Origin: Penicillus capitatus
Taxonomy: Eukaryota; Plantae; Chlorophyta
Direction of reading: 5' to 3'
Assembly (NCBI GenBank): GCA_965649825.1
Contig: OZ287700.1
Coordinates: forward strand, 62,001 to 126,000
DNA length: 64,000 nucleotides
Shown here in pieces: positions 5,375 to 34,700 of the stretch (position 1 is the first letter of the stretch; each line of letters begins with the position of its first letter). The notes beneath the pieces are model-generated. The model was not told where the DNA came from and searched no databases. It was given only the letters and a program-made list of their open reading frames with translations. The position numbers and the translations under genes were made by a program.

Positions 5375-8300
5375 TTAGACTTTGGTCTTGTCGCCAATAT
5401 CAACCATGACAAGAACCTTCTCTTCCATCATGTCCTTCATCGCCCATCTGATGCCTTCCCTTCCAAAACCCGAATCCTTGACGCCTCCATAAGGCTGAGA
5501 ATCGACACGAACACTCGGCACATGGTTCAATACAACGCCACCCACATCCAGATGTTCAAACGCATAGAATGCCTTGTCCATGTCATGTGTGAAAATGCCA
5601 GTCTGCGACACAAACACGCCAAGGCTCGCATACACTCACTCCACGGTGGTGTGAAGATTCTACCTGCAAACCGAACTCTGAATCATTGACTTTGTCGACG
5701 GCATCTGCAAAGTGTGTGTAGGATTCAATGATCAAAACGGGACCGAAAGCTTCGTCTCGGTAAATTGTCGCTGTTGGTTTCACATTTTCGAGCAATGTGG
5801 CATCATAGAATGCTCCTTCGCGTTTACCTCCAATCAAAACAGCCGCACCATCGTTGACAGCTTCATTCACCCATCTCTCAATACGAATGGCTTCAGATTC
5901 CGCAATCAGTGGACCGATGAATGTGTTCTCATCCTGACAGAGATGCACGACTGAGACAAGACCCGATTGTGGAGATCGTTGTTCACCTTGGGGTCTCCTT
6001 TCTTCAATTTTGAAACGGCATCGACGAGTCGGATTTTGATTTCATTGTAGTGATCTTGACGAATGAGCAGACGCTGCACACTGATACAGGACTGACCGGT
6101 TTGGTAGAAGGCTCCATGGACGACTTTCTCGATGATTGTCTCAACTTCTCCCTCATTCTTCGTGTCTTCCACGATGCAGGCTGCATTTCCTCCAAGCTCC
6201 AGGACTACTTTCTTTTTCCCGGCCCGTGCTTTCATTGGCCAGCCCACCTACAGACACCAAACATGGATGCAGATGGTCATTAAACATGGTTTAACGATGT
6301 ACTCCAGGTGATCCTGTAAATGAGAGGAGTTTGAAGCGTGCATCCACCGTAAACAGATCTGCTCCATCACGACTGCACGGAAGAACAGAGAATGCTCCTG
6401 GTGGCAGATGAGGTGCTTTGCTTAGAATCTCTCCTGCAAATATCAAACAATGCTGAATATGGCGATCCTTTCTCTCAAAGATCTACCGATGATGAGTGCA
6501 CCAATGGGTGTTCTTGATGCCGGTTTAACCACAAAAGGACAGCCCACTGCTAATGCAGGAGCAATCTTGTGTGCTGCCAAATTCAATGGAAAATTAAAAG
6601 GCGAAATCATAGACACGGGACCGATGGGGAATCCACGGACGATTCCTTTGAAGCCGTCTGTCCTCTTGCTGATGTCTAGAGGAGAGTATTCTCCATACAT
6701 ACGTGTTGCCTCTTCTGCTGCAATGGTAAAGGTGTCGATGAGTCGACCCACCTCCCCTCTAGAATCCTTGATGGGCTTTCCTGCTTCGATGCACAGAGCC
6801 ATGGCCAATTCCTCGAATCTTTCTTTGAAATGCGTGACACAGAAATCCAGAATCTCTTTCTTCTGCCAAGAAGACAGAGCTGCCATCGCCGGAGTCGCCT
6901 TCTCAGCAGCTCCAATGGCACGATCGATATCGTCAGCATTGGCCAGTGCCACTTGATATGCCACCTCCCCTAAAATGCCAAGGATCAGAGTTTTTACCTT
7001 GGTGCAGTTCGTGCCAGTCTACCTGTATACTTATCCGTAACCTCGAGATCGTAGTTGGGTTCTTCAGGCTTGTTGGCCAGATAAAATGGATATTGCTTCA
7101 CATCCGCTGCAATTCTTTTTTCCGACCGAGCATCCATTTGCCCATTGAGTGCTGTCTCCTCCTCCTTAATGGGTCCCACTTTTTCAAAGAAAGCTTCTAG
7201 GCTGTCAAGCGTTGCGGATAGATGTGCCTTAAGAGCCGGGACATGCAGAACACTGCTGATGGAGTAATCGATAGGAACATCGATAACGTGCACGCCTGGG
7301 TTCGTAAAACAGTGCTGCAAAAAAGACGAAAACTGCTCTGACTTTTCGACGCGATATCCCTTTGCACCATATGACTCTGCGTACTTCACAAAATCGGGAT
7401 TCGTTAGATCCAGTCCAAAATCGGGGAACTCTCCACCAGTTTGCTTCCATTTGATCATTCCATACGCATTGTCGTTCAGAATCAGCACAGTGATGTGCAA
7501 ATTCAGCATGACTGCTGTTGCCAGCTCTTGAGAATTCATCATGAATCCACCATCTCCACACACAGCAACGACTGTTCTTTCTGGGTAAATCATTTTGGCC
7601 GCCATGGCACTGGGTAATCCAGCACCCATTGTAGCCAGAGCATTGTCCAAAAGCAGAGTATTCGGGTGGTAAGTTTTGAAGTTTCGAGCAAACCATACCT
7701 GCCAAAAACAGCACAGGCATTGTCAAGTGGTTACTATCTCTATCCGTATGCACCTTGTACAATCCATTATCCAAACAAACAATGCCGTCATCTGGAACCG
7801 CTCTGCGCAATGTTTCAAGCAGAAACGGCGGGCTCAGAGGACAGGTGCCCAGATTCACACCAACCTTCAGATGTTCTTCAAAGTTCTCTCGGACGTATTT
7901 GAAGTAGCGCAGATCCCACTTAAGTGTGGTAACCCCTTTCAATCCTTCTTTCAAGCGCCAGATCGTGTTTCCAATATCGCCGACCACTTCCAGGTGAGGG
8001 AAGTACACCTGATCGACCTGAGCCCCGAAGTAGTTAATATGGATCACTTTTCTTTTGTCCGTGAAGTTCATGAAGAACGGAGGTTTCTCAACAACATCAT
8101 GGCCGACCTACATCCATCCAGTTAGCATACACTACACGCCTTAAGTGTTGCAAACACCATCAGTATAAGATCTGCATGATCAATGCATGCATGAATGTAG
8201 TCGGATGTACTGATGGCTGCCGTTCCCATAAAACTGGTGTGTCGTTCATCCACCACCCCTATGTTCAGCCATCTCCCTTGCTCTTTTGTTTTGTGCTGTC

Positions 8301-9195
8301 TGTCGCTGACCTTTTCCCATTTGTGTGTTGCAGAATGGAATGCGCGTCTGATCGATGAACTGTCTCAACATGTTTGATGTAATCTTCCGATTTGCTCCTG
8401 CTGCGATGAGGAGAAGTGGATGTTTTGCTTCCTTGAGCATTTCCAGTGCTCTGGCAATCGCTTTGTCTTCGGCAATCGGACGGCGAACTTTTTCTCGTGC
8501 GTGAATGTATGATTCATCTTCGGGAACCTAAAACGAAGAAGCATTGGGTACGAGGCATGGTGTCGGAGAACTGTCACTCACCATTTCAGCTGCAATATCT
8601 TCTGGCAGTTCCAAATGTGCGGCACCTGGACGTTCTTCTTCTGCAATGCGAAAGGCTTCCCTCGTCGAAGAGGGAATCAGTCCACCATGCACAATCTACA
8701 CGAGCACGAGCAAGCAAACGCATCTCGTTGTTTGGAATGGAAAACGCATTGGCAATACCACATACCTGTTTGGCGAGTTTGGTCACAGGCCTCTGCATAT
8801 TGACCACATCCAGAATCTGAAATGACCCTTGCTTGCTTTTCAGAATAGGCTTCTGTCCTGCGAGTAGACACCATGTTAATGCAAAGAGGCGTTATCAAGT
8901 AGCTACCCGTGATCATGAGCATCGGAAAAGCACCCAACTGTGCGTAGGCGGCGGCCGTTAGGAAGTTTGTGGCTCCGGGTCCAAGAGTTGACAGACAGAC
9001 GCCTGTCTTACCAGTCAATCTGCCAACGGTGGCCGCCATGAAACCTGCTCCCTGCTCGTGACGTGTCACTACCAATTGGATCTTTGACGTCCTCAGCGAC
9101 TCGACGAAATCCAAATTCTCTTCGCCCGGCACACCAAACACATACTCAACACCTTCATTCTCCAATGCTCGAACCAAGAGATCCGACGCCTTCAT
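5375..9195 (-). CDS. Fusion protein: N-terminal ThDP-dependent ALS-like/2-oxoglutarate-decarboxylase-like enzyme (PRK08322 type) + C-terminal ALDH21-type aldehyde dehydrogenase
   Basis: The N-terminus MKASDLLVRALENEGVEYVFGVPGEEN...TRHEQGAGF...GPG is followed by spliced GQKPILKSKQGSFQ, REAFRIAEEERPGAAHLELPED, and the ThDP motif GDGGFMMNSQEL...NDNAYG. The frame continues with no stop into YPFYLANKPEEPNYDLEVTDKYT. A 53-nt intron (7022-6970) then joins G-EVAYQVALA. ALDH motifs follow: SPFNFPLNL, KPASRTP, LELGGN, FYQTGQSC (catalytic Cys), EAFGP, PYGGVKDSGFGREG. Stop at 5375. Confidence 0.92.
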
Positions 9196-9536: not shown

Positions 9537-10868
9537 ATGGATGAGCCATTACTGAGGAGAACAGACCAAACAGTAGCCCTGCAACGCGGTTTGATCTTTT
9601 CAGAACTTAAATCGCCTTTGAGTGCGTTCGTCTGGTCTGGCTCGAAAACGCAGTCACCCTCGTTCTCTTGCACTCTAGTCTTGGGATGCTTTATTCTCGG
9701 CGCAGCGGCAATGGGGTTTGGCATCAGGTGTGTACAGATGACTATTCCTAAAAAGAGTGAACAGGACACTCCAGTGTTCGAGGTCTTCCCTTCTGGTTTC
9801 AGTTCCCTATCATGATCCTGACTCTGTCTTGCGTCGTCTGTTTTGCTCTGACCATCACGATTGATCCAGGAATTATCCATCCGAATGTTATTGACGGTAT
9901 GCCTGCCCTGCCGACTGCGTCTCATACGAATGAAGGTGTCGTGTGGCATCGTGGTCTGGACAGACCCTATCATCGCGCGTTTCGATTTGGATCTCCGACC
10001 ACAGACACACACAGATGAAAACTATCGATATCGTTGTGAAAATGATCGAATTATGAGACTTCCACTAGAATGCGATGAAAATATTGAACTGCACCATTGG
10101 GAGAAATACTGTGTGACCTGTAAACTCTGGAGACCGCCGAGGGCGCATCATTGTCGCAAATGTGGTTACTGTATGGTGAGAGGCAAGTTTGTTTGTTTGA
10201 TTCTGTCAACGTCGACGACACAGAAAAAACACGCAACATGTGATCATCTTTATGTCTGATGGCGTGTGCCTGTAGGAACGCTTTGATCATCACTGTGCTG
10301 TACTGGGCACCTGCATTGCAAAAAATAACCATCGCTTCTTCTCACTCTTTCTCCTGTGCGCGCATGTCGGGTGTGCCTTGTTTGCAGCAGGTGGTATCTG
10401 GAGACTAGATCGAATGCAGTTCCCTCGGTACATACCACAGTCGATAGAGGCTTCGATAGATAACATGCGCTCTGTGGATGCAGGCAGCCAAATTCATGGA
10501 AAGATAGTGAAATGTTTCTGATTTTGGTGCTCATCGTCATCTACTCTTACATCTACCTTCTGCTTTTCTTCGGCCTGGGTCACTGTCTCTTCATCCTTCT
10601 CGGTCCATCTGTATTCTCCTGAATGCACACCACAGCTGAGGTTGAATGTATTGCAGATGTCACCACAAAAGATCTGATAGTGGATGCTCATGTCTGGCGA
10701 GACAAGCCCTGTTGTTCTCGGCGGCGCAGTCCCTATGCTTTGTTCAAGAATTTCTTGGGGGTCTGCTTTGCCCCAGTGGGAACTAGATTTATTCATCCTT
10801 TGAATGTGGACCGGGATGAATTCGGGTATCAGGGTTCTCGTAATGAAGATTTGATGTTAGGCGCTTAA
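9537..10868 (+). CDS. DHHC-type protein S-palmitoyltransferase (spliced)
   Basis: CVTCKLWRPPRAHHCRKCGYCM splices to ERFDHHCAVLGTCIAKNNHRFF. Flanking transmembrane segments and a DPG motif are present. Confidence 0.92.
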
Positions 10869-11008: not shown

Positions 11009-11080
11009 GGGGAACGCCGGGAATTGAACCCGGGGCCTCTTGCACCCAAAGCAAGAATCATACCTCTAGACCACGTTCCC
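11009..11080 (-). tRNA. tRNA-Pro (anticodon UGG), intronless
   Basis: Reverse complement is GGGAACGTGGTCTAGAGGTATGATTCTTGCTTTGGGTGCAAGAGGCCCCGGGTTCAATTCCCGGCGTTCCCC. It has a 7-bp acceptor stem, anticodon arm CTTGC-TTTGGGT-GCAAG and a GTTCAA T-loop, with TTTT shortly downstream. Confidence 0.96.
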
Positions 11081-15006: not shown

Positions 15007-17043
15007 TTAATCGGACTCTGAACGCAGAGCGGACATCGCACGATCTAGCTGGCCTATCACTGCAGAGCGCACGTTGGGGTCCTGGTCATTGAGGCCCCTT
15101 TCCAGCATTCCGAGCAGCTGATCGGACTCCAAAGGCCGAGCAGACATCGCACCCACGAGTTGACCTACCGCTGCAATGCGAACACGGGGGTCTTGGTCAT
15201 CGAAGCTCCTTACAAGCACCACTAGCAGCTGGTCTAACTCCGAGGGCTGGGCAGACATGAGACTTGCTAGTTGGCCCACCGCTGCAGAGCGCACGCTGGC
15301 GTCGAGGTCATTGAGGCCCCGTTTTAGCACGAAGACCACCTGATCGGATTCCAAACGAACAGTAGACGCCGCCTTTACGAACTGGCCCACCGCTGCAGAG
15401 CGCACACGAGCGTCGAGGTCATTGAGGCCCCGTTTTAGCGTGAAGACCACCTGATCGGACTCCAAACGAACAGTAGACGCCGCCTTTACGAACTGGCTCA
15501 CCGCTGCAGAGCGCACGCTGGGGTCGAGGTCATTGAGGCCTCTTTCCAGCATTATGAACAGCCGATCGGACTCTCCAGGTAGGGCTAACACTACACCGGC
15601 CAACTGGCCCATCGCTGCTGAGCGCACGCTGGGGTCCTGGTCGTGGAGGCCCATTTCCAGCTTCATGAACAGCCGATCGGACTCTTCAGGAAGGGCTAAC
15701 ACTACACCGGCCAACTGGCACACCGCTGCTGAGCGCACGCTGGGGTCGAGGTCATTGAGGCCTCTTTCCAGCATTATGAACAGCCGATCGGACTCTCCAG
15801 GTAGGGCTAACACTACACCGGCCAACTGGCCCATCGCTGCTGAGCGCACGCTGGGGTCCTGGTCGTGGAGGCCCATTTCCAGCTTCATGAACAGCCGATC
15901 GGACTCTTCAGGAAGGGCTGACATTACACCCGACACCTGGCCCATCGCTGCTGAGCGCACGCTGGGGTCCTGGTCGTGGAGGCCCATTTCCAGCTTCATG
16001 AACAGCCGATCGGACTCTTCAGGAAGGGCTGACATTACACCCGACACTTGGCCCATCGCTGCTGAGCGCACGCTGGGGTCGAGGTCATTGAGGCCTCTTT
16101 CCAGCATTATGAACAGCCGATCGGACTCTCCAGGTAGGGCTAACACTACACCGGCCAACTGGCCCATCGCTGCTGAGCGCACGCTGGGGTCCTGGTCGTG
16201 GAGGCCCATTTCCAGCTTCATGAACAGCCGATCGGACTCTTCAGGAAGGGCTAACACTACACCGGCCAACTGGCACACCGCTGCTGAGCGCACGCTGGGG
16301 TCGAGGTCATTGAGGCCTCTTTCCAGCATTATGAACAGCCGATCGGACTCTCCAGGTAGGGCTAACACTACACCGGCCAACTGGCCCATCGCTGCTGAGC
16401 GCACGCTGGGGTCCTGGTCGTGGAGGCCCATTTCCAGCTTCATGAACAGCCGATCGGACTCTTCAGGAAGGGCTGACATTACACCCGACACCTGGCCCAT
16501 CGCTGCTGAGCGCACGCTGGGGTCCTGGTCGTGGAGGCCCATTTCCAGCTTCATGAACAGCCGATCGGACTCTTCAGGAAGGGCTGACATTACACCCGAC
16601 ACTTGGCCCATCGCTGCTGAGCGCACGCTGGGGTCGAGGTCATTGAGGCCTCTTTCCAGCATTATGAACAGCCGATCGGACTCTCCAGGTAGGGCTAACA
16701 CTACACCGGCCAACTGGCCCATCGCTGCTGAGCGCACGCTGGGGTCCTGGTCGTGGAGGCCCATTTCCAGCTTCATGAACAGCCGATCGGACTCTTCAGG
16801 AAGGGCTAACACTACACCGGCCAACTGGCACACCGCTGCTGAGCGCACGCTGGGGTCGAGGTCATTGAGGCCTCTTTCCAGCATTATGAACAGCCGATCG
16901 GACTCTCCAGGTAGGGCTAACACTACACCGGCCAACTGGCCCATCGCTGCTGAGCGCACTCTTTGATCCTGGTCATTGAATCCGTTCGTTAGCATCTCGA
17001 ACAGGCGTTCGGACTCTGCAGAATGGCCGGATATTTCACACAA
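15007..17043 (-). CDS. Intronless HEAT-repeat ORF (about 18 x 37-aa repeats); true 5' end unresolved
   Basis: Repeat consensus D(Q/L)DPSVRSAA..QL..V..ALP.ESDRLF..LE.GL matches HEAT helices (VRxAA). The in-frame stop is near 17110, and the first in-frame ATG is only about 16997. Confidence 0.8.
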   Translation of the reverse strand: MCEISGHSAESERLFEMLTNGFNDQDQRVRSAAMGQLAGVVLALPGESDRLFIMLERGLNDLDPSVRSAAVCQLAGVVLALPEESDRLFMKLEMGLHDQDPSVRSAAMGQLAGVVLALPGESDRLFIMLERGLNDLDPSVRSAAMGQVSGVMSALPEESDRLFMKLEMGLHDQDPSVRSAAMGQVSGVMSALPEESDRLFMKLEMGLHDQDPSVRSAAMGQLAGVVLALPGESDRLFIMLERGLNDLDPSVRSAAVCQLAGVVLALPEESDRLFMKLEMGLHDQDPSVRSAAMGQLAGVVLALPGESDRLFIMLERGLNDLDPSVRSAAMGQVSGVMSALPEESDRLFMKLEMGLHDQDPSVRSAAMGQVSGVMSALPEESDRLFMKLEMGLHDQDPSVRSAAMGQLAGVVLALPGESDRLFIMLERGLNDLDPSVRSAAVCQLAGVVLALPEESDRLFMKLEMGLHDQDPSVRSAAMGQLAGVVLALPGESDRLFIMLERGLNDLDPSVRSAAVSQFVKAASTVRLESDQVVFTLKRGLNDLDARVRSAAVGQFVKAASTVRLESDQVVFVLKRGLNDLDASVRSAAVGQLASLMSAQPSELDQLLVVLVRSFDDQDPRVRIAAVGQLVGAMSARPLESDQLLGMLERGLNDQDPNVRSAVIGQLDRAMSALRSESD
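15010..16974 (-). repeat. Coding tandem repeat, 111-bp unit; 13 near-identical units (15532-16974) with a 555-bp higher-order period, plus 5 diverged units
   Basis: CAGCCGATCGGACTC recurs at 15559, 15670 and so on (111-bp spacing). Unit order in the protein is A-B-A-C-D-A-B-A-C-D-A-B-A. Confidence 0.95.
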
Positions 17044-20674: not shown

Positions 20675-22182
20675 ATGCTTTGGAACTTTGTTTTTCTCCT
20701 TGTTGCCATCTCTTGTCTCGCTATCTGGGCCTCGATCACATGGCGGAAGAAACAAAATCGGGTCGAGTTACACCCAAAAAAGGAGGTCGTTCTTAAAGAC
20801 CTGGGAGAGCCTAAACTTCCTTTTCCTATAAGAGGTTTCAATTTCTTCGGAAGATTTCTACCCTCTCAGCGTCTAACAGTGGAAGCCGTCGTCAATGAGG
20901 CCCAAAGAAGAACGAACCTGCGAATCTGTCTAGATGAAGAGAGATACCCTTTTCGAGATGGATTGAAGAAACTGGTCCAGGATTATAACGATCACAAGAA
21001 CCATCTGACGGCGTTTGGGAGACTATGTTTAAGGAACGTCTTCGTCAAAATGATCTCAAATAACTTGCGCATGGCTGAGCAGATATGTCACCATCCCCAA
21101 ATCTTGTCCGAGTCTATCGCCCAGCCAGTCTTTATTATTGGCCCACCAAGAACAGGATCTTCCCATCTGCATGATACGCTCTCGCAGCATCCTGCTTTTC
21201 GCACTCCGAAGCATCTGGAGATGCTAAACCCTGTCCTGAAGGAAGATCATTTTGAGTCGACGAGTGCAGATCTCAGAGAACGGAGATGTAATGCTTATCT
21301 GAGGTTTGCTCAATATCTCAGGCCTCATCTATCGCTATTGCACAATGTCGATGTCCATGCGAGTGAAGAAGACATCTTCGTCACTGGCATCTTGTTTCGG
21401 AGCATTATTTTCGGAACCATGTTTCCATGCAAAGGATATATGCAGTGGTTTGGAGAAGTGGACCACATCCCTGTCTACGAGTTCCTCAAGTTGGCATTGC
21501 AAGTGAACCTCCCATATCCATTCCTTGACCCGATCACAGAGCATTGCTGTTTCGCTTGTAGCTATTGCAGTGGCAAGATGTGCACATGGGCCACCCTCGC
21601 CGCCGCTGGCTGCTAAAATCGCCAGATCATTCGTTTAGTCTACCCAGTTTGATGAAGATCTTCCCAGACGCCACTATAATCCAGACACACAGGGAAATGA
21701 ATGCTGTCCTTCCATCTTACTTGAATCTCGCTGGGTACATCCACGGGATCTTCATAAACTCGATCGATCTCAAGTGGTTCGGAGAATGGTGGACTGCATG
21801 GTTTGAGTTTGTCCTCCATCGATTCGTCAAAGATCAAGCCAACATCGAAGGTAGCCCTCCATCCTGTCAACACAAGCCAGACTGATACGTATGTGGGACA
21901 GGACGCGTAATTAATGTCCTCTTCCATGAGTTGGTTTCCGACGATCTGTCCGTCGTTCTACACATCCTGTCTGTGCTGGGCGCTTATATGGATAACGATA
22001 TACGTCAGCAGCTGAAGACTTATGCGGAAGCTCACAAACGCCATTCAAAAGGAAGAATCATATATAATGGCAGTGTCTTTGGTATCAAGAATCAGAGCGT
22101 TCGTGACCGTTTCAGTACATACCATGCAACATTCGGCTTACTACAAAACTCCTCTTTCCAGAGACAAGAGAACGGGGGATGA
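20675..22182 (+). CDS. Membrane-anchored sulfotransferase (Sulfotransfer_3 / mycobacterial Stf-like family)
   Basis: N-terminal TM segment (FVFLLVAISCLAIWASI), PAPS-binding loop PVFIIGPPRTGSSHLH, then WLLKSPDH and IFPDATIIQTHR. Two short introns. Confidence 0.85.
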
Positions 22183-22276: not shown

Positions 22277-23644
22277 TCATTTGCCGAATGCATTTTTTAA
22301 GATGAAAATCTTCTCGCTTCTGAAACGAGTAATAAGATCTTCTCTGTCATCTGCAGCGCTCTGTACAGGCACTTGCAAATTGGTCGTCTCTTCTTGGCAG
22401 AATTCTGCGAGAATGTGAGAGACAATGTCATCTTGGTGCGGTGTGTTTGGAATCCAAGATCTCAGAGTCTCCACGACCGATGAATCGAATCCTCCTCTGT
22501 AGATGTCGATATCTGCGGGGACAACATCGATGGGGAATGATGGCTTTCCATGTATCTCTTCAAACAGCTGGTAGAGTTTGGCCATTCCCTTTTCCACACG
22601 AACAAAGTCGTGAGGGTTGTCTTTTTCAACAAAGCCGTAATACTGTAGCAAATCATCGTTTGACTTGCTGCCATAGCTAATGAAAACCTGGTCGCCAACA
22701 TCATAGTCTCTATCCAAGCGCACGCTGTAGCCGTCAGAGAAGTAGTCGTACTTCAGATCACACTGGACGTTGCAGTTGTGATTGATGAAGTCGACACCAG
22801 GTGCAAGCAGATAGACTCTTAATCTCTGAGAAAGAAAGACATCATACAGAAGATTGAAAACCGAAACAGAAACCACAGCATTGAAGGTCTGTGTGATGGA
22901 CTCTGTACCCGAGAGCAAAATGTTGGCTGCGGCAAGCAGAAAGATGACCATTCCCAGTCGGATACGATCGGGCAGCCTGCTGCCGATATAAGGCCCGCTA
23001 AACGAACGGCTGCGTACAAGAGACAGACACGAAAGAAAGAGGTCTTTGTCCAGCTTCAATTCGGGTGCCTCCTTGGCCAGCATGTCTGCAAGCTGTTGCC
23101 ACTCTCTCTTTTGTTTCTTGATGGATTGGACCAATGATGGATACCTGAGATTCATCAGATCTTTTTCCGGCCAAAAGAAAGGGATATCTGCTTTCTCGGG
23201 CAGACTGCGGAGGTAGCCAGCATAGTCAGAATCTTTGCCTTTGACCCGCTCTAACATGACCATTAGAGCTAGCTTAACATACCAGGCTTGTTTATTCCAG
23301 ACATCTGGAGGGCATTCAACAGGTCCTTTTGTGTTGGGCTCGATAAACAAAGCGCTGGTTCTTGGAAGCTGTACCGCAACGTCACCGGCTTTGATGGTTT
23401 CCAAAGCCTCCATTCCTCTCAGCCCCCCATTAAACTTCGCGATTCCAAGCTTTGGAAATCGGATACGTTTTTGATTTGCCCATCTATCGAAAGCGGCTGT
23501 CGAAATCTCTTGACAGCAAAGGACGCGGCCAGAGACGATGCCATGTGTTCTGGATAGCATCTTTCCAATCAGGTATCTTGTCAGCACGGGACGGTTAAGC
23601 CGCGGAACAGGAGTACGGCGACAGTTGGCGTCACAGGGAGCCAC
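22277..23644 (-). CDS. SET-domain lysine methyltransferase, Rubisco LSMT-like
   Basis: GLRGMEA, LAPGVDFINH, QVFISYGSKSNDDLLQYYGFV and NPHD are SET/LSMT motifs, in one continuous ORF. Confidence 0.88.
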   Translation of the reverse strand: MAPCDANCRRTPVPRLNRPVLTRYLIGKMLSRTHGIVSGRVLCCQEISTAAFDRWANQKRIRFPKLGIAKFNGGLRGMEALETIKAGDVAVQLPRTSALFIEPNTKGPVECPPDVWNKQAWYVKLALMVMLERVKGKDSDYAGYLRSLPEKADIPFFWPEKDLMNLRYPSLVQSIKKQKREWQQLADMLAKEAPELKLDKDLFLSCLSLVRSRSFSGPYIGSRLPDRIRLGMVIFLLAAANILLSGTESITQTFNAVVSVSVFNLLYDVFLSQRLRVYLLAPGVDFINHNCNVQCDLKYDYFSDGYSVRLDRDYDVGDQVFISYGSKSNDDLLQYYGFVEKDNPHDFVRVEKGMAKLYQLFEEIHGKPSFPIDVVPADIDIYRGGFDSSVVETLRSWIPNTPHQDDIVSHILAEFCQEETTNLQVPVQSAADDREDLITRFRSEKIFILKNAFGK

Positions 23645-26950: not shown

Positions 26951-29900
26951 TTAGGACGTTTTGACTCCGGCTGGACAGGTGAAGGAAGAATCAAGGTTTT
27001 TGTCATAGCAAACGGTGTCACTGATCTTCAAACTCGATCGTCGTGCATCGGCTTCCGGCAATACGAATGGACCAATGACTCCAAAGACGGCAGCAGGATC
27101 GTCTGGGTTCACCACCTGGTTGAAGCCTCCGAGGTAGAGCTCGTTGGCCACGACCGAGATGTATGCCGCATCGCCCACATTGGGATACCAGACAGTACTC
27201 GTCAATGCAGCCCGGTTAGGACCGGTCATGATCCGCGTCTTCTCTCTCTTCTCCGTTGGATCGACGACCCAAAGGGCATTGTTCATATGTCCACAATCCA
27301 TCGGACTGGTGTCCAATCTGCAAGAGTCCTCGGCAATGATGATCTGACGATGGCCTGGAATGCTGGTAATGTCTTTAGGATTTGCCATTTGCTCAATGTC
27401 GCAGTTGTTGTCGCCAACGGTTCCCTGATCATCCGAACCGCAAAAGTACTGTTTAAACTCAGCTGTGTCATAATCTTCTGTCACTCGCATCTGATAGATA
27501 CAGCCGCAAGGAGACAATGCCACCTTGATGCTGTTTGTGCTGCCTTCAACGTCATCCTGAAGCATGATCTTATCTCTGGCCGTCACTCTGTTGATGGTCA
27601 CAAACAACTAGAAGACACAGAGCAAACATGAGTGATCCACGCTGCCTGAAGAATGCAGGGATTCTTACGGCTGATGTTGTCGGGTCGAACACGAGACCTT
27701 TAACGTTGGCCAATTCAATAGATGCTTTTCTCAGTGCTGCATACCGCCTTGTCTCAAAGAAAGCAGCATACGTTTCCATATCTTTCTTAACGTCGAGACA
27801 CTCGACTCTGGATTTCACGTTAATGGTCTGTAGGCGACAGGATTTGGTTCCGGGAATGGAATCGAAGATATCTGCGAATTTGATCGAGTCAGACATCTTG
27901 ATCAACTCATCGTTTGAGGCTGAGCCTAGACGAATCCATTTGATATCGAAGGATTGCAACGTTCCACGTTTCGGCTGGAATTGGGCGGCGTACAGCGTTC
28001 CAGCAGACAGGTCGTTCTTCTTGAAGGCGATAAACTTGAAAAGACCACCTCCCACTTGTCGACCTTCTGTCCAGTCCGTCATGTAAACCGTCTTGCCATC
28101 GGGCATAATCTGCATGTCTCCGTGAGAGAAGCGACCCAATGTCATGTACTTTGTCGGACTCGTGCAACCATTCTTGCTGACTTTCACTTCATAGACATAT
28201 CCATACTTGTACGGATTGAAGATCCTTCCAAGTTTGTCGAATTTATTCTTGAAATCGTCAAAGTACGTTCCGAAATAACGGACGAACTGGATACTCTTGG
28301 TAAAGGAGTCCTCCGCACGCGATTTGAAACATCCGGAGAATCCCGTAAGGCATGGATATCCCAAGAAGTCCATGGCATCTGGCTCAAATGCCTCTCCTGC
28401 AATGTGTGTATTCCACGGAGACACCAATCCGCTTCCAGAGACCCCCCACAGACCGCCATGTTCCTTCCAGTCGACGTAGTCCACACTCGCAACTTCCAAT
28501 TCTGGTGCCTCTCCTTTCTTTTTGGATCGTTCATAACTGAAAACGTAGCTGACAGCTGGAATGGAGTTGGTAGAGACCACTGAGAAGATGGTACCACACA
28601 TGTCAATGAGCGAAGAGAATCCGAAGCTGTGATGCGTTTCTTCGACATCGACCACTTTTGGATCACCTGGACCTTCCTCGTAAGAGCTCACAGGTTTGAA
28701 ATTCTCGTCAACCACGACGCCGATCTTCACTTCTCCCTTTTTGTTTCCTGCCTGTTTGTAAGCGACTCCGGAACGAATCAATTCTGTAAAGCCGGGGATC
28801 TCCTCAGCAACTCCCGTTGTCACCACTCTGAAAACTTGTGGAATTCCTTTTGGACCAACAGCGTAAGGCACTCCCACAGAACTGAAGGTCAATTTTTCAC
28901 CAGCTGTCAAATCAAAGGATCCCAGATACGAAAGCCAACCCTTTTGATCGTAAGGATGGGCAATGGTGACGCCGATATAGTTGTTTCCACCAACCACATC
29001 CTGGAACCAGCTGATCGATGACAAACCTCCTTGCAGTGGAGCTGTCAGGATTCGAGAATAATAGCCTGTGGCTGGATCATATGCCCACAAGACATTGTTC
29101 TCGTGATTTTCGCTGTCCTCTCCAATCAACAGATTCTCAAAGTTGTTAGCAAATGTCAATGATCGAGCATTGGCAACGCTTTCAGTGCTACACTTGTTGT
29201 TGGCATCTACAACAAGACACGCAACGGTTAGCTGTTATGTACTGAAATCAAAAAGATTTGTTTACCGTCTGGGGTGCTCGTTGTGCCACACATGATGGCT
29301 GTCATCGATGTCGCATCGCCTGTGTCTTCTTCGGTATCGATTTCAAAGACGCAGCCGCATGGATTTCCTTCGACGATTGCTTTGTCCTTTCCGGATCCGA
29401 CAGACAGGACGCCCGCTTCGATGCTCTTCGCCGCGATGTAGACTTTGTTAGAGTTCAAACGTGTGGCAATTTCAGAGAATTGGAAGACTCCAATGGTGGC
29501 TCCCTTGATCAGTGCCAGACGAGCTGGCTCGAAAATCGCAGCCAATGTCTCATCTTTCACTTTCAAGCACTCAATGTACTCTACGACAAGGAGGTTGCGC
29601 ACAGCCGTCGTGTTAAACCCGATGCTCACCGGTGAACTCGACGAATTCCTTGCCGGTGCCACAGCCGCTGCCTCTCGGCTCATCGTAATCAAAAATGTCA
29701 TCGAAACTGAGGGGAGCAACTTCAGGATTGCCAGATACTTCGTTCTCGACTGCGCTGACATCCGTTTCTGCAAGTTCAACCCACTCGATATCGAAAACAT
29801 CACCCACATTGATCGCCGAGATGCGTTTCTTGGCTCTGAAGAGAGCGGCGTACAGGACACCAGAAGTGAACGAACCGTCGCCGGAGTCCTCGAATTTGAA

Positions 29901-31015: not shown

Positions 31016-31385
31016 GGACAGCAAATCAACAAGTATTCAAGACACCTGAAACAATACGAGGCAAACGAGGTTGTTTGTTGTAGCACTTTTAAATACACGT
31101 GTAGCGGTTACCGCGGGTAGTGATATAGACAGCGGCAGCGGCAGCAGAGAAGCAATCACGAAGACAGATGCACACCTTTCTGTGCTAAAACTCTCTCCAG
31201 CACAAAGCGAAGCTTCAAAGGTGTTCTCTAAGTTAAGGCTAGGTTCGGAATGGAATTTCGCGAGGAGCGGACGAATTTCAATGTGAATTAACCGGTCGAC
31301 GTGTCACAAATCGCTGCACGCCGTTTGTTTGTAATGCTTTACATGATGCGCGGCATTCGTTGCGAATAAACCAATCACAGTAACC

Positions 31386-31748
31386 GTCCAAGAACCGACC
31401 GCCTCTTAACATTCAAGACAAAAAACCGTCAAACATGGAACAGTAGTTATAGCATGTTGGCAGAAAATATAGACACATGACAGACATTCTCTGATACTTC
31501 AAGCAAATGGCGTCCAAGAACCGACCGCCTCTTAACATTCAAGACAAAAAACCGTCAAACATGGAGCAGTAGTTATAGTATGTTGGCTGAAAATATAGAC
31601 ACATGACAGACATTCTCTGATACTTCAAGCAAATGGCGTCCAAGAACCGACCGCCTCTTAACATTCAAGGCAAAAAACCGTCAAACATGGAGCAAGCAGT
31701 AGTTATAGTATGTTGGCTGAAAATATAGATACATGACAGACATTCTCT
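31386..31748. repeat. Non-coding tandem repeat, 126-bp unit x about 3
   Basis: GTCCAAGAACCGACCGCCTCTTAACATTCAAG starts at 31386, 31512 and 31638. The third copy has a 4-nt insertion and abuts the APC1 stop codon. Confidence 0.95.
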
Positions 31749-34700
31749 AATAGTTCAACAAAAAGGCGTCCCGAATGTTATGATTTTTGTCTGGCTTCCC
31801 ATCGTGACTTGAGAGATCGGCCTCGATGAAGGAGAGGAAACAGTTGAAGAGAAGTTGGATGTGACGCGATTCTGCGGGCCATGACTCACATGCCTTGTCA
31901 TAGTAGTACATAAGGGCCGTTGGTTCGTCGGTTGTCATCTCCTCCGACACAAAACGCATCGACAGAAAGATTTCCCACAACTGATTCCGTATTTCCGTCA
32001 GATGCAGATACTGAATAAGTGGCGGCGGCAATCTGTGACACAGAATCATTTGGTGCATCGAGGAGATGTGGAGGCAGTGAATGGCACGAACTTCTCATCG
32101 TTGACAATTCGCTTCTCATCAGCATCAAAAAAGGAATGGAACAGATCACAATTGTAATACTCTTCAGCAGCATGGAAGTTCGACATCCATAGTACCATCT
32201 CTGAGATGATGTCACTCTATCATTCAGAACTCACTGCATTGAGGGGCCACTTACCGATTTCGGATCGAGTCCTGCGCGGCTGACCAGCAGAAACACTTCT
32301 AATGGGTTCTGCTTCAGACGCCAACTGCTTGCATTTATCATAGAGTCTGTGCACATCCATGTAGGTGTTCAGCATGTCAGGCTTATCTTGCTCGACGCAT
32401 TCTGACAAAATTCCACGGCAGAAGAGCACAAAGTCTCTCATTCTTGGATCTTGCATCCGTGCTACAACACACCATGCATTGGTCAGTTGGCCAGGTCTTG
32501 GAGCAGCAAGGGAATGACCTTCGGAACAGTAAGTCTTGGCAAAGCCAGTGAACACTGGATCGATGTCGTGTTCTTTGAAGAGCTCCATCAGTTCTGAGTA
32601 ATGCTCCGGTCCATCATCTCTGCACACAGCACACATGCTCACACAGTTATGACAGTCTTCATGAGTGACCGACAGTTGAAGAAAGGCTCGAGTGCCAAGG
32701 GCCATTCCGCACGGGTCACGCTCGTAGGGCAACATCCATTTCTTTCGCTTCACATAGATCTTGCGTTCCTGATAGATTCTATCCAAACCATATCCACTGA
32801 TCTTGCACGGATGATATCTGCTGCCAATAACACTCAGCGACGACACCTTGAGAGGAGATGCCGTTGTTACGCTAAGAGTGAGAAATGTGTGAGATGGCGC
32901 ATACCAGATGTCGTTCGGGAAGTAGACAGGGAGTGCCGAGCTCGTGCTTTAATGTCACATAATCTGTCTCGGAGTACTCCGACGTTTCTGCCATTAAATG
33001 ATCGCCGTCACGATCCGTCGTTGCCGGTTGGGATGCTAATGGGTATGGCTTGGTCTTCGAAATTCTCTGTTCGACTATGATGGGAGCAAAGACCGCTTCA
33101 CCTGAATCGACATCAATGGCTGACAATCCACGGTCTTCGGCAGCCAGTACATAAAGATGACGAAACGCCTAGGCAACAGGACAATGTATGAGCAGCTCTA
33201 CCACCAAGCACGAAACGGCAGCAGTCCGAGTCTCACCTGTAAATGAACTTGGTTATCGGAGATGAGAATTGGAAATTGAGGGAAAACAGCCATTAGCAAA
33301 CAGGCAATGGAGAGATTGTCCGTCTTAAAACCTACACGTGAACAGACGTTGCAATGCAGTCGTCGTCTGAGACCAGTCCATCATGGGGGTACCTTGCCGC
33401 CCACCTCCCAGAAAAACGAACCCTGTGGCCATGGTTATTGCCATGTAGTCGCCATATACAATATCTGATACCACTTCCTTCAACGAGGAGGATTTGACGA
33501 TTCTCTTTCGTAGACATTCCAGCAGTAGGAATGTTTGGTTGTGTCCAGATCCAGCCATGACAATACCAAGAGCCAGAGCAGTGATGCACAAGACCGACTC
33601 CATCACCCGCTTGTCTATTCGGTTGAAGCTCTCCACGGGATGGGCAATTCCATCTATGGCCTTGTACTTGAACTCCATGAACTGCACGAGATAATTGCTG
33701 AGCATAGATCTGGCTGCCTCATTGTTGGTACTGGCAAATCGCAAGCCAATTGCCAAACATGCACCAGCAACGGCATACAGATGTGCCTTGCCAATGTCAT
33801 GCAGAGTCTGAGATGCTGTAGGTTCAAAATAGTCTGTCAATGCGTGGTCTGTCATAAGTGTTGGAAGCATAGACTCTATCCACTTCTCTGACGGCAGGAT
33901 GTCATACCACAAAACAAGTGCTTTCGCCACGACACGATGCAGCACAAAATCGTGACGAATGTGATCGAGTTCATATGTTGTGCTTGGAAGAGTAAAGAGC
34001 TTCGCGATGTTCCTGTTGTGCGTTTTTAGGTACATCAAGGACAATGCGAACGTCGCAGCAGGGCCAGTCACATCTGTGTCCAGATACTCACTTTCCAGTA
34101 CAACCTAAGAGGCACAGGTCCGTCAGCAACGTAGAGGATTCAGGGGTGTTTGCGTTCGGACATTGGATTGGCTGATAATGACATTGGCTTGCTCTCCTTC
34201 GAGACCATGTTGCGTTTGATCTCGACTCAAACTGTCGCAGAGAATTGGAATGTCTGCCACAGTTTCGGCATCATCCAGACCGTCATTCCACGGAACACCC
34301 CCTGGTCCAAGCAGAGTGGTAGGCGGAGCTGACTGATTGGCGATGTCCGTTGGCTCGACGAGCGGATCGCGGCCGCCAATCATGTATTGCCACAGCATTT
34401 CGGTGATTTTGTCGTAGTAGTATCCTCGCAGTCGATCGCCAGCTCCGAGGTTGATCAGTCCAATTGCAAATCCAGCAGCCAGTGCATATCCTTCTCTGTC
34501 CAAAGTGACACCTCCATAAGGAACACTACGCCAGAAACGCTCCGAGGGTGCTGCTCCGGGAAAGAGAGGGTGGCGGCTTACTTTGATCGAATGTTGGGTG
34601 GTCTTACCCCTGGATGTCGTCCGAGTTCGTCCAACATGCGTTTTGTGGTCGTGTGATTGCCGCTGTTTGCTTTTAGGAATCCAATTGAGAGCAACATGGC

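What the first reader, a model, noticed from the sequence alone, without database searches (positions are those of the whole stretch)
5375..9195. Single-gene fusion of a ThDP decarboxylase (PRK08322/OgdA-like) and an ALDH21-type dehydrogenase: candidate one-polypeptide 2-oxoglutarate -> succinate TCA bypass
Seen in sequence: the ThDP enzyme frame does not stop after its C-terminal VPIDYS. It runs through 56 residues straight into YPFYLANKP...VTDKYT, the typical ALDH21/RNP123 N-terminus. A clean 53-nt GT-AG intron (7022-6970) then joins it in frame to the rest of the ALDH, giving a protein of roughly 1,050-1,100 aa. Both catalytic sets look intact: the catalytic Glu in RHEQ and GDG...ND in the ThDP part; LELGGN Glu and GQSC Cys in the ALDH part. 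Established knowledge: cyanobacterial 2-oxoglutarate decarboxylase was originally annotated as an acetolactate synthase of this family and works with succinic semialdehyde dehydrogenase (SSADH) to close the TCA cycle. Moss ALDH21 is an NADP+-dependent SSADH, and residues resembling its substrate-binding Tyr (FYQ) and Arg (RVD) are present here. Inference: the fusion makes succinic semialdehyde and channels it to the ALDH, yielding succinate, CO2 and NADPH. I do not know of a description of such a fusion in a green alga.
Basis: partly seen in the sequence, partly recalled or inferred. Interest (0 to 1): 0.92.

Follow-up and report, generated by a model that had tools for sequence, protein, structure and literature searches.

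The report
Fused ThDP decarboxylase–ALDH21 gene in a green alga
One intron-containing nuclear gene of a green seaweed-type alga joins a thiamine-dependent 2-oxoacid decarboxylase to an ALDH21-type aldehyde dehydrogenase, probably turning 2-oxoglutarate into succinate plus NADPH in one protein; the fusion is common in databases, yet I found no paper describing it.

Summary
On the minus strand, 9195-5375, twelve exons and eleven GT-AG introns (49-70 nt) give a 1071-aa protein. It has three ThDP-enzyme domains (PRK08322, 818 bits against a cut-off of 509), a roughly 56-residue linker and a complete ALDH, 58% identical to moss ALDH21. The junction lies inside one exon. A 79%-identical relative encodes the stretch from the ThDP C-domain to the ALDH end as one uninterrupted ORF.

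The fusion is not unique. Colinear orthologues occur in other green algae, liverworts, a fern, a red alga and a thraustochytrid. A second, independent bacterial fusion uses a different ALDH. Each fusion class has an unfused ThDP-then-ALDH operon counterpart.

The 2-oxoglutarate-to-succinate reading is plausible but unproven.
- For it: characterised cyanobacterial 2-oxoglutarate decarboxylases belong to the same NCBIfam. Both lysines predicted to bind 2-oxoglutarate are invariant. The three ALDH21 residues that bind the succinic semialdehyde carboxylate are conserved.
- Against it: the ThDP half is only about 43% identical to the cyanobacterial enzymes, falls in a separate clade, and differs at several active-site positions.

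The protein is probably cytosolic. No paper I could search describes the fusion.

Verdict: a new variant of a known two-enzyme bypass. Interest about 0.6.

The parts
5375..9195 (-). Whole coding region of the fusion gene, 1071 aa. Exons: 9195-8907, 8857-8766, 8695-8582, 8527-8311, 8258-8158, 8107-7754, 7698-7023, 6969-6487, 6433-6303, 6247-5987, 5933-5664, 5602-5375. Introns, all GT-AG: 8906-8858 (49 nt), 8765-8696 (70), 8581-8528 (54), 8310-8259 (52), 8157-8108 (50), 7753-7699 (55), 7022-6970 (53), 6486-6434 (53), 6302-6248 (55), 5986-5934 (53), 5663-5603 (61).
   Evidence: Colinear alignment with 14 homologues. Pfam and NCBIfam.
8799..9195 (-). TPP_enzyme_N (pyrimidine-binding) domain, residues 1-116, with the catalytic Glu47 (9057-9055) in TRHEQ. 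Spans intron 1.
   Evidence: E47 is invariant in all 40 aligned family members.
7952..8458 (-). TPP_enzyme_M (central) domain, residues 189-323. Spans introns 4 and 5.
7276..7771 (-). TPP_enzyme_C (diphosphate-binding) domain, residues 384-530. It holds K389 (7756-7754), M413, the G437-D438-G439...N464-D465 Mg/ThDP motif and K474 (7446-7444). Spans intron 6.
   Evidence: K389 and K474 correspond to MaKGD K386 and K471, which docking predicted to bind 2-oxoglutarate. Both are invariant in all 40 sequences of both clades.
7023..7698 (-). Exon 7, the junction exon. One exon encodes the end of the ThDP enzyme (residues 390-535), the linker (536-591) and the first 23 residues of the ALDH (592-614).
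   Evidence: The ORF 7650-6994 is open across the junction.
7093..7260 (-). Inter-domain linker, residues 536-591. The first part forms two helices (542-552, 556-563). Residues 568-582 (7164-7120) are predicted flexible (pLDDT below 50). An internal Met577 (7137-7135) is not conserved.
   Evidence: AlphaFold2 model. Linker length and sequence vary among orthologues.
6970..7022 (-). Intron 7, 53 nt, GT...AG, phase 1. It carries an in-frame TAA (6996-6994) that would truncate the protein if the intron were retained.
   Evidence: The relative L126 has no intron here.
5378..7092 (-). ALDH21-type aldehyde dehydrogenase half, residues 592-1071 (Pfam Aldedh 606-1059). Key residues: R690 (6745-6743), N740 (6595-6593), S766 in KPASRTP (6517-6515), E836 (6199-6197), Y867 (6106-6104), C873 (6088-6086), R1028 (5509-5507).
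   Evidence: The residue roles in PpALDH21 are taken from bioRxiv 10.64898/2026.01.13.699213.

Best explanation
The gene encodes one polypeptide of about 118 kDa, probably cytosolic. An N-terminal ThDP/Mg2+-dependent 2-oxoacid decarboxylase of the PRK08322 family is tethered by a partly flexible linker to a C-terminal NADP+-dependent ALDH21-type dehydrogenase, a type that acts on aldehydes carrying a carboxylate.

The most likely chemistry is:
- 2-oxoglutarate -> CO2 + succinic semialdehyde (ThDP half);
- succinic semialdehyde + NADP+ + H2O -> succinate + NADPH (ALDH half).

This would be the fused, eukaryotic counterpart of the two-enzyme 2-oxoglutarate decarboxylase/SSADH route of cyanobacteria. 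It would keep a reactive aldehyde close to the enzyme that removes it.

Shown: the fusion, the intact catalytic residues of both halves, the family memberships, and the repeated evolutionary coupling of this ThDP family with ALDHs.

Inferred: the identity of the 2-oxoacid, NADP+ use, the cytosolic location, and any channelling.
For: Gene model and domains.

Relative with a single-exon junction.

Fused transcript-derived ORFs in other species (EukProt and MMETSP entries P0009, P0017, P0026, P0027; about 4-kb Logan contigs L127/L128, which I take to be transcripts because each holds only the complete 1100-aa ORF plus short flanks).

PRK08322 membership is shared with orthologues of the characterised cyanobacterial KGDs. 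The enzymology of MaKGD, ScKGD and StKGD, including strict specificity for 2-oxoglutarate, comes from PMC10418658.

K389 and K474 (MaKGD K386 and K471) are invariant in all 40 sequences.

The ALDH half is 58% identical to PpALDH21. It keeps Cys302, Glu267, R121, Y296 and R457 and the KPASRTP motif.

Unfused operons with the same gene order occur in Alcanivorax, a Verrucomicrobiales MAG, Allosphingosinicella and a Pseudomonadota MAG, that is 4 of 5 loci checked.

A second, independent fusion class and its own Edaphobacter operon counterpart.

In the KGD-motif clade (cyanobacteria and other bacteria), 33 of 38 loci with enough flanking sequence have an adjacent ALDH.
Against: - There are no biochemical data for any member of the window's ThDP clade.
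- The ThDP half is only 41-44% identical to the cyanobacterial KGD orthologues and falls in a separate clade.
- MaKGD residues Q254 and H385 are S254 and Y388 here. The SNGFAAMG motif is DNALATMG, and H of the HQ pair is F109.
- The substrate contacts quoted for MaKGD come from docking into a model, not from a structure.
- PpALDH21 has a rather high Km for succinic semialdehyde, 181 uM.
- One acidobacterial operon links the pair to PEP carboxykinase, which could point to a C4 or C3 substrate.
- No RNA data are available for this organism.
Confidence: 0.55

Rival explanations
1. Same tandem logic (decarboxylase, then aldehyde dehydrogenase), but the physiological substrate is a different carboxylate- or anion-bearing 2-oxoacid. 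Candidates include 2-oxoadipate (to glutarate), oxaloacetate (to malonate semialdehyde and malonate) and hydroxypyruvate, sulfopyruvate or phosphonopyruvate derivatives.
For: The window clade differs from the 2-oxoglutarate-specific cyanobacterial clade at several conserved positions of the ThDP domains: S254/H260, N385, Y388, D407, A409, I111/F109. It is a separate clade. The Edaphobacter operon is PEPCK-ThDP-ALDH. The ALDH half gives sub-threshold hits to sulfoacetaldehyde, phosphonoacetaldehyde and lactaldehyde dehydrogenase models. PpALDH21's Km for succinic semialdehyde is only moderate.
Against: The only characterised member of each half's family acts on 2-oxoglutarate or on succinic semialdehyde. 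The R/Y/R triad that positions the C4 carboxylate is conserved. Both lysines predicted to contact 2-oxoglutarate are invariant. All other NCBIfam ALDH models score far below their cut-offs.
Confidence: 0.3
2. The ThDP half is a carboligase (acetolactate-synthase-like) rather than a simple decarboxylase. The ALDH half then works on a different step, for example making the 2-oxoacid from an oxo-aldehyde, or acting on an unrelated aldehyde.
For: PRK08322 is named 'acetolactate synthase large subunit'. The nearest solved structures are acetolactate synthases (13bb_A at 467 bits; catabolic ALS about 290-330 bits).
Against: AlsS and biosynthetic ALS models score below their cut-offs: 452 against 510, 404 against 551, 348 against 538. 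Members of PRK08322 that have been assayed are decarboxylases that made no aldehyde from pyruvate. The ALS positions corresponding to K389 and K474 are Tyr and Gln in catabolic ALS. Fusion or adjacency with an ALDH arose at least three times, which fits an aldehyde product.
Confidence: 0.06
3. The fused ORF is not what the cell mainly makes. Retention of intron 7 (in-frame TAA at 6996-6994) would give a stand-alone ThDP enzyme. An internal start (Met577) or an internal promoter would give a stand-alone ALDH of about 495 aa.
For: Intron 7 contains an in-frame stop. Met577 lies in the linker and would give a protein about the size of moss ALDH21. Mosses do have split genes.
Against: The junction is within one exon. 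The close relative L126 has no intron there and one continuous ORF. Fused ORFs are recovered from transcriptome assemblies of several species. Met577 is not conserved.
Confidence: 0.05
4. An assembly chimera, a bacterial contaminant or a pseudogene.
For: None found. The closest prokaryotic relatives are bacterial operons.
Against: The gene has eleven short GT-AG introns and ordinary eukaryotic neighbours (DHHC, HEAT-repeat, SET, lipoxygenase). The frame is intact and the catalytic residues are invariant. The same architecture occurs in independently sequenced species.
Confidence: 0.01

Closest known systems
Cyanobacterial 2-oxoglutarate decarboxylase (OgdA/KGD: SynPCC7002_A2770, sll1981, MAE_06010) with its neighbouring SSADH
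   Same: The ThDP enzyme belongs to the same NCBIfam (PRK08322), has the same three-domain fold and is about the same length. E47, the GDG...ND motif, the YGxIxWK motif and both lysines predicted to bind 2-oxoglutarate are kept. It is also genetically coupled to an ALDH. The proposed net reaction is the same.
   Different: The two are about 43% identical and form separate clades. Several conserved positions in the ThDP domains differ. In the KGD-motif clade (mostly cyanobacteria) there are two genes in the order ALDH then ThDP (63 of 64 same-strand cases). The partner ALDH there is only about 30% identical to the window's ALDH half. Here there is one polypeptide in the order ThDP then ALDH, in a eukaryote.
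Physcomitrium patens ALDH21A1 (PDB 5MZ5/5MZ8/5N5S), a cytosolic NADP+-dependent succinic semialdehyde dehydrogenase
   Same: 58% identity over 476 residues. The catalytic Cys and Glu are conserved, as are R121/Y296/R457 and the KPASRTP cofactor motif.
   Different: The moss enzyme stands alone. Its ThDP partner is a separate gene, with no ALDH within 10 kb downstream. The literature places it in the GABA shunt, not downstream of a decarboxylase.
Uncharacterised bacterial ThDP-then-ALDH21-type operons (Alcanivorax sp. IL2, Verrucomicrobiales MAG, Allosphingosinicella MAG; Burkholderia ALDH structures 5JRY/5KF0/5J6B)
   Same: These are the closest prokaryotic relatives of both halves (61% and 63% identity), with the same gene order and close spacing: the genes abut in the Verrucomicrobiales MAG and lie 118-159 nt apart in the others.
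   Different: They are two separate genes, and none has been characterised biochemically as far as I could find.
Bacterial class-B ThDP-ALDH fusions (P0036-P0075, 1015-1048 aa) and the Edaphobacter PEPCK-ThDP-ALDH operon
   Same: Same domain order and the same ThDP family. The R/Y/R positions are also kept in the three class-B members aligned (P0036, P0039, P0058).
   Different: The ALDH half is of another lineage (31-36% identity to ALDH21-type, 52-56% to the Edaphobacter ALDH). The linker is very short. This is an independent fusion event.
Other bifunctional ALDH fusion enzymes (PutA, AdhE, ALDH1L formyl-THF dehydrogenase, P5CS)
   Same: An ALDH domain is fused to the enzyme that makes or consumes its aldehyde. 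Channelling has been shown for some of these (review PMC12041015).
   Different: The partner here is a ThDP decarboxylase, a combination that the 2025 review does not list.

Membership tests
NCBIfam NF006187 (PRK08322, 'acetolactate synthase large subunit' family; includes cyanobacterial KGD orthologues) | Whole-protein score at or above the curated cut-off of 509 bits | tested here: met
   818.4 bits, residues 1-537. The Acaryochloris KGD orthologue scores 865.9 bits.
ThDP-dependent enzyme (POX/ALS/PDC superfamily) | N, M and C domains, the catalytic Glu that activates ThDP, and the GDG-X(24-30)-N(D) diphosphate/Mg2+ motif | tested here: met
   Pfam PF02776, PF00205 and PF02775. E47 and G437-D438-G439...N464-D465 are invariant in the family alignment.
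Cyanobacterial 2-oxoglutarate decarboxylase (OgdA/KGD) orthologous group | Falls inside the clade of the characterised enzymes | tested here: not met
   NJ tree, 527 columns. The KGD-motif clade has 100% bootstrap and excludes the window, which groups with Bryopsis and Ostreobium (97%). Identity is 41-44%. The motif DGGYGLIEWK reads DNAYGMIKWK here.
Cyanobacterial 2-oxoglutarate decarboxylase (OgdA/KGD) orthologous group | Residues proposed to contact 2-oxoglutarate in MaKGD (Q254, K386, K471) and neighbouring H385, M410, Y465, L467 | tested here: inconclusive
   Kept: K389, K474, M413, Y468. Changed: Q254->S, H385->Y, L467->M. The MaKGD contacts come from docking only.
Cyanobacterial 2-oxoglutarate decarboxylase (OgdA/KGD) orthologous group | Decarboxylates 2-oxoglutarate to succinic semialdehyde and not pyruvate | not testable with these tools
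   Needs an enzyme assay.
Acetolactate synthase (catabolic AlsS; biosynthetic IlvB) | Score at or above the cut-offs of NF006378 (510), TIGR02418 (551.1) and TIGR00118 (538.35) | tested here: not met
   452.3, 404.3 and 348.3 bits.
ALDH21 family (ALDH nomenclature) | At least 40% identity to a named member, ALDH21A1 (nomenclature rule quoted from my own knowledge) | tested here: met
   58.0% over 476 aligned residues with PDB 5MZ5. It is among the best four PDB matches, at about 615 bits.
ALDH21 family (ALDH nomenclature) | Catalytic Cys, general-base Glu and oxyanion Asn | tested here: met
   C873, E836 and N740 are invariant in alignment A1.
ALDH21 family (ALDH nomenclature) | Arg121, Tyr296 and Arg457, which bind the succinic semialdehyde carboxylate | tested here: met
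   R690, Y867 and R1028 align to them. Chain numbering is offset by 18, checked on all three. They are conserved across alignment A1, including its three class-B fusions (P0036, P0039, P0058).
ALDH21 family (ALDH nomenclature) | NADP+ preference | tested here: inconclusive
   The KPASRTP motif is identical to PpALDH21, with Ser766 at the position of Glu195 of NAD+-specific ALDHs. The interpretation rests on general ALDH knowledge, not on a test.
GabD-type SSADH, lactaldehyde DH, SafD, PhnY (NCBIfam) | Score at or above the curated cut-off | tested here: not met
   TIGR01780: 294 against 646. NF040648: 402 against 650. NF047626: 321 against 700. TIGR03250: 295 against 636.

The most novel reading that the evidence does not exclude
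ALDH21, studied for two decades as a stand-alone, stress-induced GABA-shunt enzyme of 'lower plants', may ancestrally be the C-terminal half of a ThDP-decarboxylase fusion. On this reading the fused (or, in mosses, split) pair forms a cytosolic, CoA- and lipoate-independent route from 2-oxoglutarate to succinate that produces NADPH, in green algae, liverworts and ferns. It would have been acquired from a bacterial ThDP-then-ALDH operon, not from the cyanobacterial endosymbiont. The physiological source of ALDH21's substrate would then be a decarboxylase rather than GABA transaminase.
Probability: 0.45. Interest if true: 0.75.

Novelty: new variant of a known kind. Interest (0 to 1): 0.6.

Why it matters
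If the chemistry is as inferred, photosynthetic eukaryotes other than seed plants carry a one-protein, cytosolic version of the cyanobacterial 2-oxoglutarate decarboxylase/SSADH bypass. That route would link cytosolic 2-oxoglutarate (the carbon-nitrogen hub) directly to succinate and NADPH, without the mitochondrial 2-oxoglutarate dehydrogenase complex and without GABA.

It would also explain why a cytosolic NADP+-dependent succinic semialdehyde dehydrogenase exists, although the moss ALDH21 papers I read place GABA transaminase, and so succinic semialdehyde formation, in mitochondria. It gives the uncharacterised 'acetolactate synthase-like' proteins of mosses, liverworts and many bacteria a testable function.

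The two independent fusions and their operon counterparts are a clean Rosetta-stone case. A compact two-step oxidative decarboxylase that makes NADPH could also interest metabolic engineers working on succinate or 4-hydroxybutyrate production.

Tried and rejected
- The neighbourhoods of the bacterial fused genes (L001-L004) were uninformative.
- I could not obtain the MaKGD sequence: the supplement holds only a coordinate file and primers. I translated the mutagenesis primers into peptides and scanned genomes for DGGYGLIEWK, which recovered cyanobacterial orthologues.
- PDB 13bb_A, the best ThDP structural match, has no usable description and lacks K389.
- The first bootstrap run timed out and was redone with a numpy distance routine.
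- Kopecna et al. 2017 and Brocker et al. 2013 are not held, so I cannot exclude a remark on fused forms there.
- A plastid or cyanobacterial origin was considered and rejected on the tree and on ALDH identity.
- A 'ThDP + D-2-hydroxyacid dehydrogenase' protein (P0106) looked like a further informative fusion. Its junction reads like a read-through of two adjacent genes, and the dehydrogenase matches no specific family.
- The 'split' Coccomyxa C-169 entry (P0076) ends in what looks like intron read-through, so I take it to be an annotation artefact rather than a real fission.
- Foldseek was not run. The model (pLDDT 74.5) would only re-find ALS and ALDH21 structures.


Full report
OBSERVATION.

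The minus strand between 9195 and 5375 carries a split gene. I located eleven introns by their GT...AG ends (49-70 nt). Joining the twelve exons gives an open frame of 3216 nt, or 1071 residues, from ATG 9195 to TAA 5377-5375. An in-frame TGA lies 30 nt upstream of the ATG, so this exon offers no N-terminal extension (read).

Exon 7 (7698-7023) is open from the ThDP C-terminal domain through ...VIDVPIDYS, then 56 linker residues, into YPFYLANKP...VTDKYTG. The next intron (7022-6970, 53 nt) contains the in-frame TAA at 6996-6994. The two enzymes are therefore joined within one exon, and splicing is needed only to continue the ALDH.

Pfam finds TPP_enzyme_N (1-116), TPP_enzyme_M (189-323), TPP_enzyme_C (384-530) and Aldedh (606-1059). 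NCBIfam places residues 1-537 in PRK08322 at 818 bits against a cut-off of 509. The AlsS and IlvB models stay below their cut-offs. The best solved-structure matches of the C-terminal half are three Burkholderia ALDHs and moss ALDH21, all at about 615 bits.

IS THE MODEL RIGHT?

The 1071-aa model aligns colinearly with 14 homologues, with no gap or insertion at any splice site. The closest database relative (P0023, 81-84% identity) lies on a 4.5-kb contig, L126, with 41% GC. That contig has frame breaks at the positions of the window's introns 2 and 4, so it is genomic DNA. Yet it encodes everything from the ThDP C-domain to the end of the ALDH as one uninterrupted 660-codon ORF. In that species the fused reading frame needs no splicing at all, which independently confirms the reading across 7022/6970.

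Fused ORFs of 1100-1145 aa also come from transcriptome assemblies: EukProt and MMETSP entries, and Logan contigs of about 4 kb that I take to be transcripts because each holds only the complete ORF plus short flanks. The gene is a normal nuclear gene. Its neighbours are a DHHC palmitoyltransferase, a HEAT-repeat protein, a SET-domain protein, a lipoxygenase and others.

DISTRIBUTION.

The architecture is not peculiar to this window. Full-length colinear proteins occur in:
- Bryopsis sp. (72%) and Ostreobium quekettii (71%);
- Coccomyxa spp. and Elliptochloris;
- the streptophyte algae Mesotaenium and Spirogloea;
- the liverworts Riccia and Calypogeia (Marchantia carries at least a TPP_C+Aldedh gene model, P0122);
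- the fern Ceratopteris;
- the red alga Rhodosorus;
- the thraustochytrid Hondaea;
- several unnamed metagenomic contigs.

In a neighbour-joining tree of the ThDP halves (527 columns, 100 bootstraps), the window groups with Bryopsis and Ostreobium (97%) inside a chlorophyte clade (100%). Streptophytes form a clade (92%) in which the split moss genes (Physcomitrium, Sphagnum) are nested among fused ones. This indicates gene fission in mosses. The moss ThDP gene has no ALDH within 10 kb downstream.

About forty bacterial proteins of 1015-1048 aa are also ThDP-ALDH fusions. Their ALDH half is only 31-36% identical to ALDH21-type enzymes and 52-56% identical to the ALDH that follows a ThDP gene in Edaphobacter. 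There are thus at least two independent fusions.

Each fusion class has an unfused counterpart with the same gene order. For the window's class these are ThDP (61% identity) followed directly by an ALDH21-type gene (63%). This arrangement occurs in Alcanivorax sp. IL2, a Verrucomicrobiales MAG, an Allosphingosinicella MAG and a Pseudomonadota MAG, that is 4 of 5 loci examined. The Pseudomonadota MAG shares synteny with Alcanivorax, so it is not an independent case.

In a library clustered at 50% identity (1.84 billion representatives), only two full-length fusion representatives appear among the top 150 hits, one for each class.

WHAT DOES THE THDP HALF DO?

The cyanobacterial 2-oxoglutarate decarboxylases (SynPCC7002_A2770, sll1981, MAE_06010) have been assayed. 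They are specific for 2-oxoglutarate and make no aldehyde from pyruvate (PMC10418658).

I translated that paper's mutagenesis primers into peptides and scanned species-representative genomes for DGGYGLIEWK. This recovered cyanobacterial orthologues such as that of Acaryochloris marina.

It is, however, only 41-44% identical to the window's ThDP half. The motif-bearing clade separates from the window's clade with 100% bootstrap.

Position by position:
- The two lysines that docking placed against 2-oxoglutarate (K386 and K471 in MaKGD; K389 and K474 here) are invariant in all 40 sequences of both clades. Catabolic ALS has Tyr and Gln at these positions.
- The window clade has its own invariant set (S254, H260, N385, Y388, D407, A409, I111 and F109) where the KGD clade has Q, x, V, H, S, G, Y and H.

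The active sites are related but not identical. The substrate is therefore an inference.

WHAT DOES THE ALDH HALF DO?

It is 58% identical to Physcomitrium ALDH21A1. That enzyme is a cytosolic, NADP+-dependent succinic semialdehyde dehydrogenase with a Km of 181 uM. Arg121, Tyr296 and Arg457 bind its substrate's carboxylate (bioRxiv 10.64898/2026.01.13.699213, citing Kopecna 2017).

After correcting the 18-residue tag offset of chain 5MZ5_A, these three align with R690, Y867 and R1028. Cys302 and Glu267 align with C873 and E836, and the cofactor motif KPASRTP is identical. The three class-B bacterial fusions in alignment A1 keep the R/Y/R positions as well.

COUPLING.

A PRK08322-type ThDP enzyme sits next to, or is fused to, an ALDH in at least three unrelated arrangements:
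- cyanobacteria and other KGD-motif bacteria: ALDH upstream, 33 of 38 loci with enough flank, 63 of 64 same-strand cases in that order;
- the ALDH21-type operons and the eukaryotic fusion;
- the Edaphobacter-type operon and the bacterial fusion.

Assayed ALDH partners are known for two of these arrangements, and both are succinic semialdehyde dehydrogenases. Repeated coupling is what one expects if the ThDP enzyme releases an aldehyde that the ALDH oxidises.

MECHANISM PROPOSED.

ThDP half: 2-oxoglutarate -> CO2 + succinic semialdehyde. ALDH half: succinic semialdehyde + NADP+ -> succinate + NADPH.

An AlphaFold2 model (mean pLDDT 74.5, shallow alignment) folds both halves. It shows two helices after the ThDP domain and a low-confidence segment at 568-582 before the ALDH N-terminal strands. 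This fits a flexible tether.

Both parent families are tetramers, so a common oligomer is plausible. Channelling is speculation. The lack of a presequence and of a C-terminal targeting signal, together with the cytosolic location reported for PpALDH21, points to the cytosol. The route would then be a cytosolic shunt rather than a literal closure of the mitochondrial TCA cycle.

My confidence is about 0.97 that the fusion is real, about 0.8 that it works as a decarboxylase-then-dehydrogenase tandem, and about 0.55 that the substrate is 2-oxoglutarate.

RIVALS.

- Another carboxylated 2-oxoacid (0.3). This is supported by the clade-specific active-site residues and by a PEPCK-ThDP-ALDH operon in Edaphobacter.
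- A carboligase function (0.06).
- Separate products through intron retention or an internal start at the non-conserved Met577 (0.05).
- An artefact (0.01).

COMPARISON WITH WHAT IS KNOWN, AND NOVELTY.

Functionally the closest system is the cyanobacterial OgdA/SSADH pair. By descent, the closest are the uncharacterised bacterial ThDP-then-ALDH21 operons. The ALDH half is a member of family ALDH21. The ThDP half is a member of PRK08322 but not of the OgdA orthologous group.

Ten full-text searches found no paper describing a ThDP-ALDH fusion, or linking ALDH21 to a decarboxylase. A 2025 review that catalogues ALDH fusion enzymes does not list it. Plant ALDH reviews and a 2026 moss study treat ALDH21 purely as a GABA-shunt enzyme. 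One genome annotator did note 'probable lactaldehyde dehydrogenase at C-terminal half' for Coccomyxa sp. Obi. The 2017 ALDH21 paper could not be read.

I therefore rate this a new variant of a known kind. It is present but unremarked in databases, and it has a testable consequence for how ALDH21 is understood.

Noticed in passing
window 11009-11080 (-): A single tRNA-Pro (anticodon TGG), found by both ARAGORN and Rfam. It is the only RNA family hit in the 64-kb window.
   Followed up: no
window 15007-17043 (-), tandem repeat 15027-16974: About 17 copies of a 111-nt (37-aa) tandem repeat lie inside a 678-aa open frame that matches HEAT, Cnd1 and PDS5 repeat families. This is an unusually regular HEAT-like repeat array at the DNA level, 84-89% identical between copies.
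   Followed up: partly
window 31385-31771: A 126-nt tandem repeat of 3 copies, 94% identical, in an apparently non-coding stretch.
   Followed up: no
window 9861-10259 (+): The neighbour upstream of the fusion gene, transcribed divergently, carries a DHHC palmitoyltransferase domain with the variant motif AHHC.
   Followed up: no
window 49102-51069 (-), 27570-29159 (-), 53097-54827 (+), 61494-63059 (-), 20675-21616 (+), 22277-23644 (-): Other long exons in the window encode a lipoxygenase, a PhoX-like phosphatase, a right-handed beta-helix protein, a lamin-tail-domain plus endo/exonuclease/phosphatase protein, a sulfotransferase and a SET-domain protein. None has an evident link to the fusion gene.
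   Followed up: no
L005 8103-13228 (Edaphobacter sp. HDX4): GTP-dependent PEP carboxykinase, a PRK08322 ThDP enzyme and an ALDH lie head to tail with gaps of 44 and 24 nt. This suggests an operon tying the pair to oxaloacetate/PEP metabolism.
   Followed up: partly
L014, L027, L037, L049, L063 (Mycobacterium spp.): Mycobacteria carry a PRK08322-like gene with the cyanobacterial KGD motif DGGYGLIEWK and an adjacent ALDH. This is separate from the well-known E1o-type Kgd (the latter from my own knowledge).
   Followed up: no
L131 6362-8001 (Verrucomicrobiales MAG): The ThDP gene upstream of the ALDH21-type gene is called as two overlapping ORFs (280 + 274 aa). This is probably a frameshift or a sequencing error. 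Its stop abuts the ALDH start.
   Followed up: no
P0106 (899 aa), P0091 (649 aa): Two bacterial PRK08322 proteins carry extra N-terminal modules. One is a generic D-2-hydroxyacid dehydrogenase, whose junction looks like a read-through of adjacent genes. The other is a glutaredoxin/GST-like segment. The first hints at a route from 2-hydroxyacid to 2-oxoacid to aldehyde.
   Followed up: partly
P0076 (Coccomyxa subellipsoidea C-169) and P0082, P0086, P0102 (mosses, liverwort): The 'split' Coccomyxa entry ends in low-complexity sequence that looks like intron read-through, while its sister species has the fused gene, so the old gene model is probably truncated. The moss and Calypogeia split proteins keep a 50-120-residue tail after the ThDP domain, possibly a remnant of the linker.
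   Followed up: partly
window 7135-7137 (Met577): An ATG in the linker would allow a stand-alone ALDH of about 495 aa, the size of moss ALDH21. It is not conserved in orthologues.
   Followed up: partly
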